Both the position numbers and the translations under genes were made by a program. A DNA stretch of 64,000 nt from Mytilus californianus (lineage: Eukaryota). The notes under the pieces are model-generated. The model was given only the letters and a program-made list of their open reading frames with translations. It was not told where the DNA came from and searched no databases. Shown here one piece after another: positions 42,501-52,690 of the stretch. Position 1 is the first letter of the stretch; the number at the start of each line of letters is the position of its first letter. The stretch covers positions 6,758,001 through 6,822,000 of the forward strand of contig NW_026262637.1 of assembly GCF_021869535.1 (NCBI RefSeq), in the 5' to 3' direction.

Positions 42501-43879
42501 TAAGGACTGTATCTTTTATTATTGATATAATTGTTTAATATTGAGACAATTTAGCTTGGTATAAACAGGGAAGGGGAGATAATTCAAATGACTATCATTC
42601 TATTGAAAAGTTGCCAGGAACATAGTAAAAACTTTTTCGGATTCAAACAGCTTTAAAGGGTAAAGAAGGTTATGATATTTTTATTGAAATAGCCACAGCT
42701 TTCATAAACTACTTGATTTATTGTTACAATTTCAGGAAATGTTGCATATAAATAATACCATCAAAATTTGAAATGTGAGTTTCTTCTTTAGTGAAACTTC
42801 CTGTCACAATTTTTTCACAATAATATAAATGTCACAAAAACTTCTTAATTGAAAGATGTTACGTGAATAATCAACCAGTTTGTGACCTCAATATTGGAAT
42901 TTATGAAGTAAGGACTTCCTTATCAGTGTCCATTTCAAGAAAAAAGAATAAGAAAAAATCAAAATGCATAGAATAGTACAGAAAACAAGGAAAAAAGTAT
43001 CTGAACAGCTAACATTTGAAATGAAAGCTTTTTGCTGGTACAAACTCTTCATCACAATCTATATTTACCCAGATAGGATGGACTGGACCTCAAACTGTAA
43101 AGAATCTATAGCTTAAGATCACCTTCCCCTTGGTTAATAAGGATTTGAAAATTCATTACTTTGATAATTCAATGCTCTTTTTTTTGCCTGACAGTTATGT
43201 TTCCAAAGCTTAGCACTATTTGATATTTTAAACTGGGAAATAATTAGGCCTCATTTCTGAATAAAATGATACAATACAATTTTGTTTTATGTGAGAAAAA
43301 AAGAAGATAAAGATTGATTGTTTGCTTATGTCTAGTGGTAAATGTTTCATGCATTTTTAGGATGAGAAGATAATGAAAAGACTACAAGCAGAGTACTGTA
43401 ACAATAGCAGATATGGGTTTAAAATCCAGAAGTAAAAATATGACTCAAACATTTAACTGCAGTCATTCTAAACAATCTACAAACAAAACTGAATCCTCAT
43501 GCTACCTTCCAAATTAAAAAGGCAAATTTGTATACTATTTGTATAAAACTTTTCGTTTTAGAATGTTCAAGTCTCCAATAATTCATGTCTTTTATACAAT
43601 TGTATATGAGCGTCGATCAAGCACAATTATGTTCATTGTTATCGACATCATACTTTATAAGTTTTGTGTTTTGATAACTTTGCTAAGTACTAAGCTTTTC
43701 CTTCTATTAGGATTAAAAAACTCATCAAAGATACCAGTTTGATGATTTTGTAAACCAGTCACGCATTTCATCTTCAAAAGACTCATCAGTGACGCTCGAA
43801 TCAAGCTAAACGTAAGATCGACTAAGGTTATCCAATCAGAAAGAGTAAAACAATCAATAAGGCACTCACAATGCAGAAA

Positions 43880-44259
43880 GTTTTCTTAGTAATATCAGTT
43901 GATATCTTGTCATCAGAACAAGACACAAACTGTGAACTATTATGTGCAAAAGTAGATATAATCTGAGTAAAAGCTATCTATATTAGGGCTTATTACAAAC
44001 CACAAGAAAACGATACTGATAGTATCAATGAAATAAGTAGATTATTACAGAGAATACCAACACACAGTAATATTTGACTACTTTGAGATTTCAACCTCCC
44101 TAAATATGACTTGGTCAAACAAGAACTAAAACCCAATTGCAAATTCACAAATACATACAACAACTTTTTTTATATCATGAATGACCATAATCTTGAACAG
44201 GTGGTACATATACCAACAAGACAGGAAAACACACTAGATCTGTTGTACCTAAATCAGCC
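43880..44259 (+). pseudogene. Decayed LINE, APE endonuclease region (left part, interrupted by the TTAA transposon)
   Basis: NLEQVVHIPTRQENTLDLLYLNQP continues in frame after 51167 as LVQNIKTLPSLGTSDHDIV (APE C-terminal PTR..LD...SDH). Confidence 0.8.
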
Positions 44260-44363
44260 TTAAGGTGAGAGGTACGTAAATGAACGCCTCTAACGGAAAA
44301 CGGGAAAATTTGCGTTCGTTGTTATGAGAGTTATCCCCCTTACACCAGAAAAATATTTCCAAG

Positions 44364-47300
44364 ATGTCGGAAGATATTCCGCTTCGTCGGAAAAATGGTC
44401 AATTCGGTGGAAAAGTATTCAATTCTTCTCATCAAAATATAACAAAAAGTGTAGTTATTGTAAGTGAAATGTCTTGTCCGAGTGAAACATTGCTTCCCTC
44501 CCAAGAAAATGAAAGTAACTTGGCATGGCGTGATGGTCGAAGAGTGGTTGAGTTGGGGTTACTAGCTGACCAACTTAAAGCTTGCAAGGACTGCTATGCA
44601 CCATTATTTTTACACAACTGCTCAAAAGAACAAAGATACGGTCTCGGAAGTATTTTGTATATACCTTGTGGTAGCTGTCCCTACACAAACTTAATAAACA
44701 CTGGTAAACGGCACAGATCAGAGACTTCAAAAAAGGGAATGTTGATATGGGACGTGAATACAAAGTGTAGTATGGGTAAGAATATTACAAACACTTGCAT
44801 ATACACACAATAACAAATTAAAGCTCACACTAATACGTTGACTTTTTTTATTTTCATTCTAATTTTTGAAGTCGAAGACTCACACTTACAATATTGCATA
44901 CAAAGTCAAAGAGATAAATTCGTTTCTCAAAAGTAAAACAACTGTCAACGGTTGAAGGTATTCAACTCTTAACAAAAAAGAGGAAATACTCTTTTATATG
45001 CTTAATAATTATTATTCTTGATTTGACATTCGTGTTAGACAATCATTTTCTCACACAAATATAAACATTTGGATGTTCATACAAATAAAAAACCGTTGTT
45101 TACAGTGCTTTCTTTCACGTCCGCAATATGGTCTATAAATAGAAGTGGAAAGTGCTAGTACCGAGAGTGAAAAAAATAGGATTAAAACAAATAATTTTTA
45201 CTAAAAATATTGAACAAGAATTTTAAATTGTTGCGTGAAATGAAATTTACAAAATGTAATGTCGGAAATTACTTCCGAAGGGTAATTGAGCAAGAGAAAA
45301 GGAAAAGAAAATTGAATGCGAATCGAAATTGGGATGACATTGTGCACGGACAAACGGGAAGTAAAATGGTCTTTCAAAATAAACAAAAATTTATTACAAA
45401 AAAGTTTACACGTTTCTTTTAATTCAATTTGAAAGAAATATGATGAATAATGAGTTTCAAGCATGAAAATACGAGAAGGGAAAATTACGATTCCGCTGCA
45501 CGAAAATTATCCCTTACCGCCGCTTCAAAAATAAAATGATAAGCCAAGTTCATATAGTATACAGAAAATTCAGAAATTTGTGCGTGCATTGATTAATTTA
45601 TTTTGAAATAGGAAAAGTTATGTCACTAGTTATTGCGATTTCAGTAAAAAATGTATACAAATGTAGCAATTAGAATTTAGAATTAGAGGTTTTATTTTTT
45701 TTGCGATACGTATTTTTTAAGTACGAACATTTTATTAAAATGTCTTTCCAATAAACTTAAATTTTATTACATAAATCGGATATTTATGAAAGAAATCTTT
45801 GTTTAGCCTATTTAGATGCAGGAATGGGTCCACACCAGACAGTCAATTTCCTTGCTGGCATTAACATCCCCCCAATAGCAGTTAAGAATTTAAAGATAAG
45901 AGAAAGAGAAATCGGCAAATCCATAGAAAAATGTGCTGAAATGTCTTGTCAGAAAGCTCTACAAGAAGAAATAGATTTAAGCAGGTAATTCAAAATTTTA
46001 TATCTATTAAAAATAAGAAGATGTGGTATGATTGACATGCACTAAGACAACTCTCCACGATAGACATAATAGCACAAAATAACAACTGCATGTATAAGAC
46101 CGTAAGTCCTTCAATAATGAGAAAAACCCATATCGAATAGTCAGCCTCAAAAGGCCCCGAAATACTGTTAAACAATTCAAACGAGAAAAACTAACGGTCT
46201 GATTTATGTACAAAATAATAGACGAAAAACAAATATGTAACACAGCAACACACGACAACCACTGAATTACAGGCTTCTGACCTGGGACAAGCACATACAG
46301 AAGGTGGCGGGGTTAAACTTGTTTGAAGGCACTTACCCTTCCCAAAACTTGGGATAGTGGTGTCTCTAGTTTATAGTAATTAACCAATTTTAGAAAATGT
46401 CTTTATGAAGAAATAAATCATTGCAAATGGTGAACATCTAAAATTAAATCTTGAAGTGTCAATGGTTCAGTATTATGAAAAAATCAAACGAAATTCAGGC
46501 TTCTCCTCACAATCAATAATATATATAATGGATCCAGGCATCTCCTTACAATCAATAATATATATAATGGATCCAGGCATCTCCTCACAATCAATAATAT
46601 ATAAAATGGATGATAGTTTATAGATATATTGAAAACAAAGTTAATCTGATTGCCAGCTTGTAAGATTAAATAAACCTTGTTTATATAAACGGCCCATTAA
46701 CAAGAATCATATATTTTTAGAGATGAAGATGATCATTCAAATGGAACTTCAATAACAGTTTCTTTTGATGGTGCTTGGCAGAAAAGAGGAAGTGGAAGAA
46801 GCTACAGTAGCTTGACAGGTATACCTATATGCACTGGAAAACGATAAATAGCTAAAACAGAGCCCACTCCTCACACCCGAAAAAACGCTTCTTATTTGGT
46901 TAATGATTTTTTATGCCTAGAGGCTAGCCAAAGGGGGAATTAAGTGTTACCCTTGACCGTCCTTCCGTCCGTCCCATTTTTGTTTTCACAATCTTCTCAC
47001 CCACATTTAATAAAAGTAATCCTCAATGTTGAACACAACAATTTGCAGACATGCAGGGTTCAAATTTAGGCAGTGAGCCGCTTACTATTCTAGAGTTATG
47101 CCCCCTTTTAAATGGGAAAATTGTAAATGTTTTCGTTTCCCCACTCTATCTTACGTTTGCCTCATGTAAATTTTATGAATCTCATAAACATTACTGAGAA
47201 CCACAAATATTTCAAAGCTTTGGGTGGGGGCATTTGTGTACCCAGACAAATTCTTCTTTTCATTTTTGATATATATTTTTCAATAAGAATGCTGTTATAA

Positions 47301-50058
47301 ATTCTTATCGATTTTAAATTAATCTTATAATTATATTGGTAGGTCATGCTACAATGATAGGTGAAAAAACTGGAAAATGTGTGAGTCAAGGAACTAAATC
47401 AGCAGACTGCAGAAAATGTATGTATGTGGATGAAAAGGGAGATGGACATCACGATTGTAGGAAAAATCATACTGGAAGTGCAAAGTCGATGGAGTCAAAC
47501 TTAGCCGTTGAGATGGTGCAGGAGCTGCAGTGCAAAGGATGCAAAGTTTCCTGTATAATAATGGATGACGATACCACTACTCTGGCTAGACTAAAAGAAA
47601 ACATTAATTCTGACATTGTTAAAAGATCAGACAGAAATCACCAAAGAAAAAATATTGTTAGTGACTTATACCGCTTACATAAAAAACACAAAGGTAAATT
47701 GTCAACTAGTACTATAAGCTACTTGACAAAAGATTTAGACTATGCAATAGCCCAAAACAAGAACCGTGCAGAACAATTGAGCCAGAATATTTATTCAATC
47801 ATTCCCCATTCTTTTGGTGACCATTCTAAATGTGACTTATCGTGGTGTAACTACCATAAAGATCCAGAAAATTACAAACATAAAAGTCTTCCATATGGCA
47901 AAAATTTAAACGGAGAGGAAATGTTTGCCGATTTGTCAAAATTGTTTGATACTTACGCAAAGAATTCAGATAAATTAGCTAACTGTGGCAGCTCGCAAGG
48001 AAACGAATCCTTAAATCAAATAATCGCGTTAAAGGCACCAAAAGCAAAGCATTTTGGGAGTAGTGAATCCCTTCCTTTCCGAGTATGCGTGGGAGTAATT
48101 CAGAAAAACGAAGGTCGTTCTTATATACCACAAGTATATGAAGCTCATAAATTGTCACCTGGAAAATTTACAGTAATGCATACGGCAAAAATAGACAAAA
48201 AGCGCAAGCATGACAAAGTAAATGCAAGTACCCGGGAGGCGAAGAGAAAAAGACTTGTCAAAAAGGGAAAATTCAACTTGAATCTAAAGGCCAAAGAAAT
48301 ACGAGAAGGCGTAACATATGCTACCTCTATTTCTGCACCAGCAAAATCGAGTGAGAATGCTGAAGATATTTCACACATTCCTGATCCTGAACCAGAAGTG
48401 ACGGAAGATCCTATGTCTTTGAAAGACGAAACATTTGTTTACTTTGACCTTGAAACTACAGGGTTCGGTAAGAAATTAATTGTTTTTGTTGTTGGCTTTC
48501 TTTTATTATATTGTCAATAGAATCGTTATCCCTTTTCGGCTACAGGTTATTTTCTTATTTATTAAGAATTTAAACAGCCAGATCTTCTTTGATTTGAATC
48601 TAAGGTGACTAATCGGAAATTTATAAACAAGCGAGACCAGTCTGTTAACGTTACATGTAGGCATAATATTTTATATTTCGTATTGTCATTCAAAAAGGGA
48701 CAAAAGACAACTTGGAATAAAATGTGTTGCGTTTCTATACGACCTGAGTATATTACTAGAAATCTTTATAGTATCACAGTATATGAAATTTCTTAGTGTT
48801 TTTTTTTATATATCAATACTTAGGAGTTTGAATATAGTAATAATATCACATGTCTTTAACATTATGCATACATGTATGCACCTCTGCACGTTTAATAACA
48901 CTTGTCTCTTCAATAAATCAATTTATCTTATTTCTGATTTTATATATATAGTTACAGTATTTAGAAGAAATAAATTAAAAACAAAGAATAAATAGAGAAA
49001 TTAACTGAAATACAGAAATTCAGAGGAGACTACAAGATGAAAAAAAAAAACCCTTCACAACCGGAATCGCTATCATGTATAACGGGAAACAACAAATGTT
49101 TTTTTTTTCCTGCATGGGACTGTATGCGTTTCCGTTTGTATTGCTAAGTAATATAAACGATTGTAGTTTGTTACTGTGTGCATCGTAAGATGAATGAAAG
49201 GACGGCAATTTTGTAAGTATTAATATCAAAGACTTATTTTGAATTGTTTCGTTTTCAGGTACTGATTGTGATATTATTCAATTAGCTGCAGCATATGACA
49301 ACCAAAATTATAATCGGTATATGGTACCCGGTCAGCGTATCTCGCCATCTGCTTCTAAAGTAACCGGATTTTCAAAAAGTGGTTTAATTTTGTATAAAAA
49401 CGGGGAAATAATGCAGACGGACGAAGAAAGTGAAATTTTTAAACAGTTTATTTCTTGGCTTCCCAAAAAATGCATTTTGATTGGTCACAATTCAAAAATT
49501 TTTGATTCCAGAATTTTGACTAAGGCTTTACAAAATTATAATATCATGAAAGATTTTGAATTAAAATGCGGTGGATTTATTGACACCTTATCATTGACTA
49601 AAGAACTACTACCAGACAGAAAGACAAATAAGCAGTCATACAACCAGGAATCACTTGTAAAAGATATTGTTGGCATAAATTATGATGCACACAATGCCAT
49701 TGGCGATGTGCAATCCCTGCAACAGCTGATCAACACGCTAAAAGTCTCTCCAAGAATTCTAGAAAAACACAGCTTCTCTGTTCAGTACACAGTAAACATG
49801 ATCAGTAAGCTGCAGCTAACTAAATCTAGACTGGATACATTTAGCAACATGCCATCTACTTTTTGTTCAAAGACAATGCTGAACAAAATTGCCAGATCTG
49901 GTTTACGGTTAAACCATCTTATCCTTGCAGGAAATAGAGGAGGTGTTGATGGCATACGCGAATTGCTAACCGAACAGTTTGACGGGAAGCCCCGAGTTAC
50001 TAAAGACAAGAAGATACTAGACTCGATTTCAGAACACATTATGTCATTGAAAAACTAG
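44364..50058 (+). CDS. Spliced transposase-exonuclease fusion, 870 aa: join(44364..44775,45807..45984,46721..46818,47343..48467,49259..50058)
   Basis: All introns are GT-AG, phases 1,2,1,1 match, total 2613 nt, no internal stop. N-terminal CxxC..CxxC. Putative DDE: SFDGAWQKRG / IMDDDTT / SDRNH / QGNES. DEDDh: YFDLETTGFG / GHNSKIFD / FIDTL / HNAIGD. Confidence 0.9.
46008..46370 (+). mobile_element. Dispersed repeat copy (same family as 3335-3720) inside intron 2 of the transposase gene
   Basis: Collinear similarity to 3335-3700. Confidence 0.85.
46496..46612. repeat. 3 x 39-bp tandem repeat in intron 2
   Basis: CAGGC(A/T)TCTCC(T)..CAATCAATAATATATATAATGGATC starts at 46496, 46535 and 46574. 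Confidence 0.9.
46907..47255 (+). mobile_element. Short HINE-like element in intron 3 of the transposase gene
   Basis: TTTTTTATGCC start, CCGTCCTTCCGTCCGTCC microsatellite, 3' GGGTGGGGGCATTTGTGTACCC terminus. Confidence 0.6.
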
Positions 50059-51167
50059 AAAAAACATTGTCTGAACGCATATACTTTTGTTATTGTATTA
50101 CACGTTTAGTTTCTAGACGAAACACATTACAATTTTAAAATATTTGCATCAATTCACAATTTTCACTAAGATTAATTGAACAAAACCACGGATAAGAGAA
50201 AAGAGAAATGATAATTTGCATCAAACTTCCAAAATATCTTTTGTGTTGGGTTTTTACCTATCAATTACGTGTATCCCCTTTGCTTTTATAATATTAAACA
50301 CACCATTTAATTTTAGGATGAAAAATTAAATCAGTACTATTGGGCTCGATGTATGTGTTTATTTTTTTGTGTTGTGTTCATGTGCCATTGAAAACATAAT
50401 TATCAATACATATATGTGACCTACATCTACGTCGTACGACGGTCCATCGGCACATTGATGACTATTCAATTATTCTGCAACGATCAGGTAAAAGAAATGT
50501 TTGTTTTGTTTACTACTGTTTGTCTTTTGTTTTTTTTTTACAGTTTTTCCGTGGCATTGTCAGTTTGTTTTCGACTTTGGTACATTTCGTTTCCCTTATT
50601 GTGCAGCAGCAAATATTTCATGTATTTTCGGGTCGAAAATATAATCAATGAATGTATATCGTCATTATAATCAAAGAGACACCTTGATGTAGCGGTCGTT
50701 GTCTTTATTTGACAAGATTTCTATGTTGGTGACGATTCTGCTGATTGAGACTTGACGTTGCGTAATCCTTTTCGGCGACGTCATGTAATTTCTATCTTTT
50801 TTCAGTCAGCAACACCCTTTCAACGGCTGATATATAAAAAGAGAGTCCGGTAACCATAGGAAAATTATATATCAATGGAAAGGAAAATTCTATCATAAAA
50901 ACATTTAATTTTTATAGAAAAATTGTAGGAATGGTTTTAACTGCAGATTAAATTAAGCTTGAAATTTCTTATTTTTTGCGTAAATTTGACGTTATGTCTA
51001 TGTACTTCATGGTGTTATTCTAACATTTTCAAATGACTGTAACTTTTAAATTAGAACGGTTACCCACTCAAATTTTTCAATTTTTCTGTTTATTTTTAGA
51101 AGTTCTACGTGCATACAATTTCTTAAAAAAATCGGTGGACAAGCCATTTACGTACCTGTTACCTTAA

Positions 51168-52690
51168 CTTGTACAAAACATAAAAACACTACCTAGTCTT
51201 GGAACATCAGACCATGACATTGTCTTTCATGAAATGAACATAAAATGGGTAGAAAAATAAATCAATTCAAAAAAGCAGACTGGGACAAAATAGGTACAGA
51301 AGTGAAGAACTTCCAAGATGAATACTTTTCTCTGGGAATAACAAACACCACTACAGAAGAAAAGGGGCTGCTGATAAAAAAAAATACAACATATAGCAGA
51401 CAAAAATATTCCATCTAAAATATTGAAACAAAAACTAAATATTCCTTGGCTAACACTAGAAATAAAGAGACTACTAAGAAAAAGAGACAGAATATATCAG
51501 AAATTAAAATCAACAAAAGCAGAGCATAAATCAGATATTATCAAAAATTACAGATCTTTAAAACACCTAGTGCACTAAAAGCTAAGAAAATCATACAAGA
51601 AATATATAGAAAATATTATAATTGAAGACAGTAAACTGGAAGATAAACCCAGCAAGAAATTTTGATAATTCATAAAAAACAGAAAAGTGAAAACATAGAT
51701 GTATCACCACTAAAGGTAAATGGTATAACAAAAACAAACCCTCAAGATCAGGCTGAAGCATTGACTCTCAGTTTCACTCAGCACTTACCATACCTAAACC
51801 TTTAAAATTATCACACATTTGTGAACTGAAATAATTAGAATCAACAACAACACACACATTTGAAATGAAGCAAATCAATAATATCACTTCAGAAGGAACA
51901 TCCAAATTACTAAAAAACTTAAACCCATCTAAAGCAATTGGTCCAGACAACATATCACCTCATTTTTTAAAAGAAGTACACCATGAAATCTCTGCACCTG
52001 TAATATCTGACTTGTTTAATTCATCAGTAAATACAGGCACAGTACCAAACAACTGGAGAGAGGCCATGGTTGGTTACAGTATTCAAAAAAGGAGCAAAAT
52101 CTGAACCCGAAATTATAGGCCTATCTCCCCAACCTGTATTCTTAGTAAATCGTTAGAACACATTATTGAATCATCTATAATGAAACATCTAGATAATTAT
52201 AATTTACCATGTTTACCATACCCACTGCAGCATAGGTTCAGATCAAAAGTTAGCTGTGAAACACAACTACTAACATTCACACAACAAATACTCGATTATA
52301 TGGCAAACGGTAAACAAACTGACATAGTTGTTATGGACTTCTCAAAAGCATTCGATAGAGTAGACCACCAAAGACTTATCTTAAAGCTAAAATGCATGGG
52401 TATAAACAATAAAACATCAGACTGGATTAAGGCATGGTTATCTTACAGATTTCAAAAAGTGGTAGTTGACAGTCACACATCAAGTAGCGTTCCTCAAAGC
52501 TCTGTTCTTGGTCCATGTCTTTTCTTTATTTACATTAATGACATGCCAGACAACCTCAAAAGTAATGTTCGCCTCTTTGCAGATGATACATTGTGTATTT
52601 ATCAGTATCATCACTTACTGACTGCCACACCCTTCAACAGACTTACATAAATTGGAACAATGGGAGCAAGCATGGTTAAGATTTTAAATG
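51168..52690 (+). pseudogene. Decayed LINE (CR1/Jockey group), rest of APE, linker and RT; 3'-truncated
   Basis: SDHDIV, KAIGPDNISPHFLK, NYRPIS, SCETQL, DFSKAFDRVDH, VPQSSVLGP and LFADD across frameshifted ORFs 51865-52104 and 52180-52650. Confidence 0.9.

What the first reader, a model, noticed from the sequence alone, without database searches (positions are those of the whole stretch)
44260..51167. Complete TTAA-flanked DNA transposon with a hidden, intact five-exon 870-aa transposase gene
Seen: TTAA duplications, 19-bp TIRs (17/19) and GG..CC ends delimit 6900 bp. The ORF track shows only three unrelated-looking fragments. Two further small exons (45807-45984, 46721-46818) join them through GT-AG introns with matching phases into one stop-free CDS containing the putative first catalytic Asp (SFDGAWQKRG). 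Established: a TTAA TSD with RR..YY termini is the Kolobok hallmark (piggyBac has TTAA but CCC ends), and a D/CxxH motif after the second Asp (here DRNH) occurs in the Kolobok/hAT/MULE/P group. Inference: an autonomous, potentially active element. Proteins with the DGxWQKRG signature are often auto-annotated as Mutator-like, so these termini could reassign or define the lineage.
Basis: partly seen in the sequence, partly recalled or inferred. Interest (0 to 1): 0.85.

Follow-up and report, generated by a model that had tools for sequence, protein, structure and literature searches.

The report
KolobokD transposon in a mussel genome
This is an intact 6.9-kb cut-and-paste DNA transposon of the California mussel, of the already described KolobokD type, whose transposase is fused to a 3'-5' exonuclease; it is an ordinary new family member, but its exonuclease module turns out to be the closest relative of the vertebrate PML-like (Plex9) exonucleases.

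Summary
TTAA repeats (44260-63, 51164-67) and 19-bp inverted ends (17/19, GG..CC) bound a 6,900-bp element. Five GT-AG exons give a stop-free 870-aa protein.

The window is Mytilus californianus. RefSeq already annotates exons 2-5 (XP_052088170.1, 727 aa); only exon 1 is missing there.

Copies in M. coruscus (one) and M. trossulus (two, 99.9% identical) sit at different sites with the same ends and TTAA on both sides. So do two copies of a 40%-identical scallop family.

The Kolobok reading is right, but the lineage needs no reassigning. Repbase Kolobok-1/-9_CGi carry the same SFDG(A/G)WQKRG, CCHC-finger and DxxH signatures. Kojima & Bao (2022) already named transposase-plus-DEDDh-exonuclease elements KolobokD.

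This finding left out the C-terminal third: a complete DEDDh exonuclease plus a PML_C (SAM-like) tail.

dN/dS of 0.15 against M. coruscus and the near-identical M. trossulus copies point to a recently active family. Activity of this particular copy is not shown. Other first-stage notes of this scan (unchecked) report similar elements elsewhere in this genome.

Side result: the exonuclease module is 36-41% identical to fish and shark Plex9/PML-like exonucleases. No paper in the searched library links the two.

The parts
44260..44263 (.). Left TTAA target-site duplication
   Evidence: Similarity to the M. coruscus and M. trossulus copies starts exactly here.
44264..44282 (+). Left terminal inverted repeat, GGTGAGAGGTACGTAAATG
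   Evidence: pair I6. Identical in M. coruscus and M. trossulus; the first ~70 bp are nearly invariant across the three species.
44364..44775 (+). Exon 1: start codon and N-terminal Cys-rich region. It covers PF20700 profile positions 1-79 and is absent from the RefSeq model.
   Evidence: Pfam. Same N-terminus and same e1/e2 junction peptide in M. coruscus P0151. An RNA-run contig joins 44775 to 45808 (X20 record 17).
45807..45984 (+). Exon 2
   Evidence: The e2/e3 joint 45984>46721 (GT..AG) is seen in contigs of two RNA-type runs.
46721..46818 (+). Exon 3, with the first catalytic Asp (D213 in SFDGAWQKRG)
   Evidence: D is present in 53 of 54 aligned relatives.
47343..48467 (+). Exon 4. It holds the CCHC finger (C252, C255, H266, C268), D304/D306, D326xxH329, the second zinc finger (H385, H390, C393, C398), catalytic E451, a basic linker, and exonuclease motif I (D598, E600 at 48446-48454).
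   Evidence: Pfam PF20700 positions 173-357, E 1.7e-35. Conservation. 2,466 relatives in the representative library.
49259..50058 (+). Exon 5: the rest of the DEDDh exonuclease (D687, H749, D754), the PML_C / SAM-like domain (49867-50046) and the stop codon
   Evidence: Pfam RNase_T, Exu_RNase_H_like and PML_C 7e-15. PDB Plex9 hits at 2e-24. DEDDh columns invariant. AF2 model pLDDT 95.7; best structural match Plex9.1, TM 0.91.
51145..51163 (-). Right terminal inverted repeat (plus strand reads CATTTACGTACCTGTTACC)
   Evidence: The last 32 bp are invariant in three Mytilus species.
51164..51167 (.). Right TTAA target-site duplication
44384..44414 (+). Two subterminal copies of TCG[GT][CT]GGA[AC]AA. 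A third copy lies at 51132-51142. They are possible transposase binding sites.
   Evidence: The motif occurs only three times in the 64-kb window, all subterminal in this element. Their function is untested.
51168..52650 (+). Right part of the non-LTR retrotransposon into which the element inserted (the left part ends at 44259)
   Evidence: RVT_1 at 52180-52647, E 4e-18. The open frame runs from 44111-44260 across a single TTAA into 51168 onwards.

Best explanation
An autonomous cut-and-paste DNA transposon of the Kolobok superfamily, KolobokD lineage, in Mytilus californianus. It is inserted at a TTAA inside a decayed non-LTR retrotransposon.

**The protein.** One five-exon gene encodes an 870-aa protein made of:
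- an N-terminal Cys-rich DNA-binding region;
- an RNase H-fold DDE core (D213, D304/D306, E451) with the Kolobok-typical CCHC finger, the D326xxH329 signature and a second zinc finger inside an all-helical insertion domain;
- a basic linker;
- a complete DEDDh 3'-5' exonuclease (D598, E600, D687, H749, D754);
- a SAM-like PML_C tail.

**Shown here.** The anatomy, the family membership, the TTAA/GG..CC boundaries at six independent insertions, purifying selection on the ORF, and very recent copying of the family in M. trossulus.

**Inferred.** The transposase binds the 19-bp ends (perhaps also the subterminal TCGGTGGA-type motifs), excises the element and reinserts it with a 4-nt stagger at TTAA. 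The fused exonuclease trims 3' ends of transposition intermediates, as Kojima & Bao proposed.
For: **Boundaries.**
- TTAA plus 17/19 inverted ends, unique in the region.
- Same ends and TTAA at non-orthologous sites in M. coruscus and at two sites in M. trossulus whose copies are 99.9% identical.
- A 40%-identical Pecten maximus family has two 99.5%-identical copies, also with TTAA and GG..CC ends.

**Gene.**
- 870 aa, stop-free.
- Exons 2-5 equal XP_052088170.1.
- Splice sites are conserved in M. coruscus.
- The e1/e2 and e2/e3 joints are seen in contigs of RNA-type runs.

**Family.**
- Full PF20700 coverage in the full-length orthologues, E 1e-78 to 1e-83.
- Motif-by-motif match to the curated Repbase Kolobok-1/-7/-9_CGi alignment rows.
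- The C/DxxH motif and both zinc fingers described for KolobokD are present and conserved.
- The fused DEDDh exonuclease is what defines KolobokD.

**Fold.**
- Best matches for the transposase core are the IS256-type ISCth4 transposase (Z 11.1) and Hermes hAT transposase (Z 10.3); P element scores Z 7.4.

**Selection.**
- dN/dS is 0.15 with dS 0.21 against M. coruscus.
- The ends are nearly invariant while introns are 81-89% identical.
Against: - No transposition event of this very copy was observed.
- Only one exact copy of its protein is on record in the assembly.
- A raw-read RNA run of the species showed no exon coverage in the 6% sampled.
- The RNA contigs that show splicing differ by about 3% and may come from sister copies or another Mytilus sample.
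- No empty site could be recovered: no paralogous LINE copy was in reach, and the reads tool was limited to 6 kb.
- No Kolobok transposase has been studied biochemically as far as I know, so the chemistry and the role of the exonuclease are inferences.
Confidence: 0.92

Rival explanations
1. An intact-looking but immobile relic: a single old KolobokD insertion in M. californianus that is no longer transcribed or mobilised, perhaps because it is silenced.
For: - Only one locus encodes this exact protein.
- There is no exon coverage in the sampled raw RNA reads.
- Its introns carry nested high-copy repeats.
- It differs by 7% in protein from the recently copied M. trossulus element.
Against: - No stop, frameshift or catalytic substitution in 870 codons.
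- All splice sites are intact and the ends are identical to those of the recently copied M. trossulus element.
- dN/dS of 0.15 shows the lineage has been filtered for function.
- A contig in run X15 carries the same left end joined to a different flank, so at least one more copy exists in that sample (record 9).
Confidence: 0.35
2. A domesticated host gene (transposase-derived, with an exonuclease) rather than a mobile element.
For: - NCBI annotates it as an ordinary protein-coding locus, LOC127725289.
- The coding sequence is under strong purifying selection.
Against: - It keeps both inverted ends and the TTAA duplication.
- The related copies in M. coruscus and M. trossulus lie at different, non-orthologous sites.
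- M. trossulus has two 99.9%-identical copies.
- This copy sits inside a decayed LINE.
Confidence: 0.03
3. A Mutator-like (MULE) or piggyBac element, as the Pfam name 'Mutator-like transposase' or the TTAA target might suggest.
For: - The only transposase Pfam hit is PF20700 'Mutator-like transposase'.
- The best structural match is an IS256-type transposase, the bacterial kin of Mutator.
- TTAA is also the piggyBac target.
Against: - The duplication is 4 bp (TTAA) at six of six insertions, not the roughly 8-11 bp that I recall for Mutator-type elements.
- The ends are GG..CC, not the CCC..GGG of piggyBac.
- There is no hit at E <= 0.001 to any other transposase family (MULE, Transposase_mut or piggyBac models would have been listed).
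- The core matches curated Kolobok rows motif by motif, including the zinc finger between C/DxxH and E that MuDR, P and hAT lack.
Confidence: 0.02

Closest known systems
KolobokD lineage of the Kolobok superfamily (Kojima & Bao 2022, Mob DNA 13:24, PMC9587614)
   Same: - TTAA duplication and RR..YY ends.
- DDE core with C/DxxH, a CCHC finger after the first Asp, and a zinc finger before the last Glu.
- A DEDDh (DnaQ-type) exonuclease downstream of the transposase that resembles exuperantia and TREX.
- Found in molluscs, arthropods and cnidarians.
   Different: - Nothing essential differs.
- I did not find this Mytilus family named in the paper's text or in its supplements as held.
- The paper does not mention the PML_C/SAM-like tail or the similarity to PML/Plex9.
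Repbase Kolobok-1_CGi, Kolobok-7_CGi and Kolobok-9_CGi (Crassostrea gigas)
   Same: The same signature strings are seen in Data S5 of PMC9587614:
- SFDG(A/G)WQKRG;
- TGK..C..CR..C..H.C(R/K)K..N;
- S(A/S)K(S/A)ME;
- (I/V)MD(N)DSTT;
- (C/S)D(R/S)NH;
- H(V/L)(F/Y)G(D/E)..H..C..W C;
- GS(S/T)Q(A/P)NES(L/F)N.
   Different: - A different host and family.
- Identity could be judged only by eye from the printed alignment, not computed.
Vertebrate Plex9 / PML exon-9 exonuclease module (Mathavarajah et al. 2023, PMC10123124; PXL domain, PMC13659232) and Drosophila Exuperantia
   Same: - DEDDh fold.
- 36-41% identity to fish and shark Plex9-like proteins.
- Plex9.1 is the best structural match: TM 0.91, rmsd 1.4 A.
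- An exonuclease followed by a SAM-like/PML_C domain, as in PML-1 and Exu.
   Different: - Here the module is fused to a transposase inside a mobile element and keeps all catalytic residues.
- Human PML and Exu have lost the catalytic residues, and teleost Plex9 lacks the PML_C tail.
piggyBac
   Same: TTAA target and duplication.
   Different: - No piggyBac transposase domain.
- GG..CC ends rather than CCC..GGG.
- C/DxxH-type core.

Membership tests
Kolobok superfamily | [quoted passage not shown] | tested here: met
   TTAA on both sides in the window, in M. coruscus (1 copy), in M. trossulus (2) and in Pecten maximus (2): six of six insertions.
Kolobok superfamily | Termini 5'-RR .. YY-3' | tested here: met
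   GG..CC in the Mytilus family and in the Pecten family.
Kolobok superfamily | [quoted passage not shown] | tested here: met
   D213 (53 of 54 where aligned), D306 (78/78), D326 and H329 (78/78), E451 (77/78).
Kolobok superfamily | Zinc finger between C/DxxH and the last E (absent in MuDR, P and hAT) | tested here: met
   H385, H390, C393, C398 are conserved in 77-78 of 78 sequences. Feature as defined.
Kolobok superfamily | Sequence similarity to curated Kolobok transposases | tested here: met
   Motif-by-motif agreement with the Kolobok-1/-7/-9_CGi and Kolobok-1_ADi rows of the published alignment. Compared by eye; no score could be computed because Repbase is not available here.
KolobokD lineage | DEDDh (DnaQ) exonuclease encoded downstream of the transposase | tested here: met
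   Fused in frame. D598, E600, D687, H749 and D754 are invariant in 28 sequences. Pfam RNase_T / Exu_RNase_H_like. PDB hits.
KolobokD lineage | CCHC zinc finger just after the first catalytic D | tested here: met
   C252, C255, H266, C268 are conserved in 73-76 of 78 sequences. Feature as defined.
KolobokD lineage | Placement inside the KolobokD clade in a phylogeny of Repbase Kolobok cores | not testable with these tools
   The Repbase/Data S5 sequences cannot be loaded as tool inputs.
Mutator / MULE (MuDR) | Long target-site duplication (about 8-11 bp, from my own knowledge of the family) and a MULE-type core without the zinc finger before E | tested here: not met
   4-bp TTAA at six insertions. 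The zinc finger is present. At E <= 0.001 the only transposase family listed is PF20700, so no MULE or Transposase_mut hit.
piggyBac | piggyBac transposase domain (DDE_Tnp_1_7) and CCC..GGG ends | tested here: not met
   No such Pfam hit. The ends are GG..CC.
Active (transposition-competent) element | Observed new insertions, excision, or insertion polymorphism of this copy | not tested
   Only indirect evidence: an intact ORF, dN/dS 0.15, and 99.9%-identical paralogous copies in M. trossulus.

The most novel reading that the evidence does not exclude
The two-domain tail of KolobokD transposases (a DEDDh exonuclease plus a SAM-like PML_C domain) may be the source of the vertebrate PML exon-9 / Plex9 exonucleases, and possibly of insect Exuperantia. 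On this reading, a module now used by jawed vertebrates to restrain retrotransposons was domesticated from a DNA transposon.

**Evidence here.**
- The mussel module is 36-41% identical to fish and shark Plex9-like proteins (E down to 1e-69), against about 20% for TREX1.
- Plex9.1 is its best structural match.
- It carries the Pfam PML_C domain.
- Vertebrate Plex9-like sequences form one clade that groups, with moderate support (84/87), with bivalve transposon-borne exonucleases.
- The PML papers place the origin of the module in jawed vertebrates and name no source.
- No paper in the library connects Kolobok with PML or Plex9.

**Not excluded.**
- The opposite direction: an early capture of a host EXO-SAM gene by Kolobok. 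A hemichordate has tandem stand-alone copies without a transposase.
- The tree is poorly rooted.
Probability: 0.35. Interest if true: 0.7.

Novelty: new member of a known kind. Interest (0 to 1): 0.35.

Why it matters
**The element itself.** It is a clean, complete reference copy of a little-studied transposon lineage.
- In the searchable library, KolobokD is mentioned in a single paper.
- The family appears to be recently active in Mytilus, which is useful for annotating mussel genomes.
- It could serve as a candidate for the first biochemical study of a Kolobok transposase and of why it carries an exonuclease.
- It also shows that the Pfam label 'Mutator-like transposase' (PF20700) covers Kolobok elements.

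**The wider point.** This is the side result: the transposon's exonuclease-SAM module is the nearest known relative of the PML-like exonucleases of vertebrates. That gives a testable source for a domain whose origin the PML literature leaves open.

Tried and rejected
- **Other copies in the window.** None; the TIR pattern hits only the two ends.
- **Paralogous empty site.** The joined flanks were searched against the window and all fetched loci, and only the flanks themselves matched.
- **Pfam on the immediate flanks.** The 50-aa and 29-aa flank pieces gave nothing, so the 'endonuclease domain' identity of the insertion point is my inference. Only the RT domain 1 kb downstream is confirmed.
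- **Wasp relative.** P0094 (Eretmocerus) has no TTAA-flanked inverted ends at 14/18 or better within 10 kb. It was left aside.
- **Raw RNA reads.** Run X21 covered only the nested repeats, not the exons. The joint table was truncated, so e3/e4 and e4/e5 were not seen as explicit joints.
- **Rfam.** No match on 43500-52000.
- **Bacterial promoter/terminator scan.** Irrelevant for an animal genome.
- **Region search for full-length PML orthologues.** It returned only 12 proteins and no PML.
- **Profile search of the PDB.** It did not reach human PML.
- **Foldseek on the transposase core.** Nothing below E 0.001. Only the exhaustive aligner gave clear transposase matches.
- **Supplement search.** 'KolobokD' found no row names in the paper's supplements as held.
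- **Exonuclease outgroups.** The three outgroups in the exonuclease tree did not behave as an outgroup.
Full report
**What is there.**
The window is from Mytilus californianus: locus L007, from assembly GCA_021869535.1, is 100% identical over 43260-52167. TTAA lies at 44260-44263 and at 51164-51167. Just inside are 19-bp inverted ends matching at 17/19, beginning GG and ending CC, so the element is 6,900 bp. A scan of all TTAA pairs around the gene for inverted ends returned only this pair.

**The gene.**
The exons are 44364-44775, 45807-45984, 46721-46818, 47343-48467 and 49259-50058. It gives 870 aa.
- Residues 144-870 are identical to RefSeq XP_052088170.1 (LOC127725289, 727 aa), which starts at a Met inside exon 2.
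- Exon 1 is supported in three ways. It matches Pfam PF20700 positions 1-79. The annotated 886-aa M. coruscus and 872-aa M. trossulus proteins start with the same peptide (P0151 aligned; P0216's PF20700 domain begins at residue 60), and P0151 shows the same e1/e2 junction. A contig of an RNA-seq run joins 44775 to 45808 (X20 record 17).
- The e2/e3 joint (GT..AG) is seen in contigs of two RNA-type runs.
- X20 contigs break at the exon 4 and exon 5 acceptors, but those two joints were not listed explicitly.
- All ten splice sites are conserved in M. coruscus.
- The exon 4/5 junction joins exonuclease motif I (FDLETTG) to motifs II and III, which is an internal check on that junction.
- One raw-read RNA run gave no exon coverage in the roughly 6% sampled.

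**Independent copies fix the boundaries.**
- In M. coruscus (L001), similarity of 85-91% starts at the TTAA and stops at the other TTAA. The flanks are unrelated and the ends are identical.
- In M. trossulus, two copies on different chromosomes are 99.9% identical over 7.54 kb. They encode the same 872-aa protein and are each flanked by TTAA.
- A scallop family only 40% identical in protein has two 99.5%-identical 9.5-kb copies with TTAA and GG..CC ends.
- That makes six insertions out of six.
- In the window, removing the element and one TTAA leaves an open frame running from the left flank into the right flank of a non-LTR retrotransposon. Its RT domain lies 1 kb downstream.

**What it is.**
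Pfam calls the core 'Mutator-like transposase' (PF20700; full-length coverage in the orthologues at E 1e-78 to 1e-83). The published Kolobok alignment (Data S5 of Kojima & Bao 2022) shows otherwise.
- It contains the Repbase rows Kolobok-1_CGi, -7_CGi, -9_CGi and Kolobok-1_ADi with the same strings as here: SFDG(A/G)WQKRG, the CCHC finger, SAKSME, MD(N/D)DSTT, (S/C)DRNH, H.FG.H..C..WC and NESLN.
- That paper defines Kolobok by TTAA duplications, RR..YY ends, C/DxxH, and a zinc finger before the last Glu that MuDR, P and hAT lack.
- It names the lineage with a fused DEDDh exonuclease KolobokD, found in molluscs, arthropods and cnidarians.
- All of these features are present here and conserved in 78 relatives.
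- The predicted core (pLDDT 91) is an RNase H fold with a helical insertion. Its best matches are the IS256-type ISCth4 transposase (Z 11.1), Hermes (Z 10.3) and, lower, P element transposase (Z 7.4), as expected for the C/DxxH group.

The hope that these termini would reassign or define a lineage is not: that work is published.

**The part this finding left out.**
Residues from about 590 to 870 are a DEDDh exonuclease with all five catalytic residues, followed by a Pfam PML_C domain (E 7e-15).
- By sequence the nearest solved structures are deposited as 'exodeoxyribonuclease III': 9L85 (E 2e-24) and zebrafish Plex9.1, 9MRC (E 5e-20). TREX1 scores 1e-6 and Exu 3e-3.
- The AF2 model (pLDDT 95.7) superposes on Plex9.1 at TM 0.91 and rmsd 1.4 A.
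- It aligns over both domains with the Exuperantia EXO+SAM structure.

**Is it active?**
Shown:
- The ORF is intact and has all catalytic residues.
- dN/dS is 0.15 (dS 0.21) against M. coruscus.
- The ends are nearly invariant while introns are 81-89% identical.
- The family copied itself very recently in M. trossulus.
- A contig in run X15 (organism A, the label of the best DNA holders) carries the left end joined to a different flank (record 9).

Not shown: any movement or polymorphism of this particular copy.

The role of the exonuclease is inference. It may process the 3' ends of intermediates, as Kojima & Bao suggest. By analogy with TREX1 and Plex9, it may instead clear DNA that would alert the host or belong to competing retroelements.

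**Side result.**
- The module finds fish and shark proteins named PML-like, 'three prime repair exonuclease 4' or 'exodeoxyribonuclease III' at 36-41% identity.
- In a tree of 53 exonuclease domains the vertebrate sequences form one clade (84/71). That clade groups (84/87) with bivalve transposon-borne domains. Deeper nodes are unresolved and the outgroups are poor.
- One 'stand-alone' Mytilus exonuclease is really the tail of a second KolobokD family.
- A hemichordate has three tandem stand-alone genes with no transposase.
- The PML papers place the origin of the domain in jawed vertebrates and name no source.
- No paper in the library links Kolobok to PML or Plex9.
- The homology itself is solid. 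The direction of transfer, domestication or capture, is open.

**Verdict.**
This is a correct and careful observation of a new family member of a known transposon lineage. Interest in the element itself is modest. The relationship between the exonuclease module and PML/Plex9 is the part worth following up.

Other first-stage notes of this scan describe similar Kolobok+DEDDh elements elsewhere in this genome. I did not check them.

Noticed in passing
window 46008-46360 (intron 2): A very high-copy repeat. Its DNA word depth is 3e4-2e5, against about 30 for the rest of the element, and it is also abundant in the RNA runs. It is present in the M. coruscus copy too. There is no Rfam match.
   Followed up: partly
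window 46496-46611 (intron 2): A 39-bp unit repeated three times in tandem, 94% matches.
   Followed up: no
window about 46850-47200 (intron 3): A second repeated stretch (DNA word depth 750-2500), shared with the M. coruscus copy.
   Followed up: no
window 44384, 44404 and 51132: The motif TCG[GT][CT]GGA[AC]AA occurs three times in 64 kb, always on the plus strand and always subterminal in the element. The sites may bind the transposase. The left pair lies inside exon 1.
   Followed up: partly
window 44111-44259 and 51168-52650: The host of the insertion is a decayed non-LTR retrotransposon (RVT_1 at 52180-52647). Its frame is restored, with an in-frame TAA, when the element and one TTAA are removed.
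   Followed up: partly
L001 14550-17801 and 19041-19864: The M. coruscus copy carries an extra ~3.2 kb in intron 4 and ~0.8 kb in the 3' region relative to the window's copy. A 1-nt indel near the stop lengthens its protein by 16 aa.
   Followed up: no
L006 around 9896 and 17431: One M. trossulus copy sits in a palindromic target: its left and right flanks are reverse complements of each other.
   Followed up: no
L009 7437-8012, 10082-10906, 15544-16176: The hemichordate Glandiceps talaboti has three tandem exonuclease genes with no transposase nearby. The middle one is intronless and has EXO+PML_C; the upstream one has only an RNase_T hit. They bear on the direction of exchange between hosts and KolobokD.
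   Followed up: partly
L008 5073-11695: A second Mytilus KolobokD family, 50-70% identical in protein. Only its exonuclease tail is annotated, as a 336-aa protein (P0183).
   Followed up: partly
P0217 (Merluccius polli, 887 aa): A fish protein with four tandem Plex9-like exonuclease motifs, probably a fused tandem gene array.
   Followed up: no
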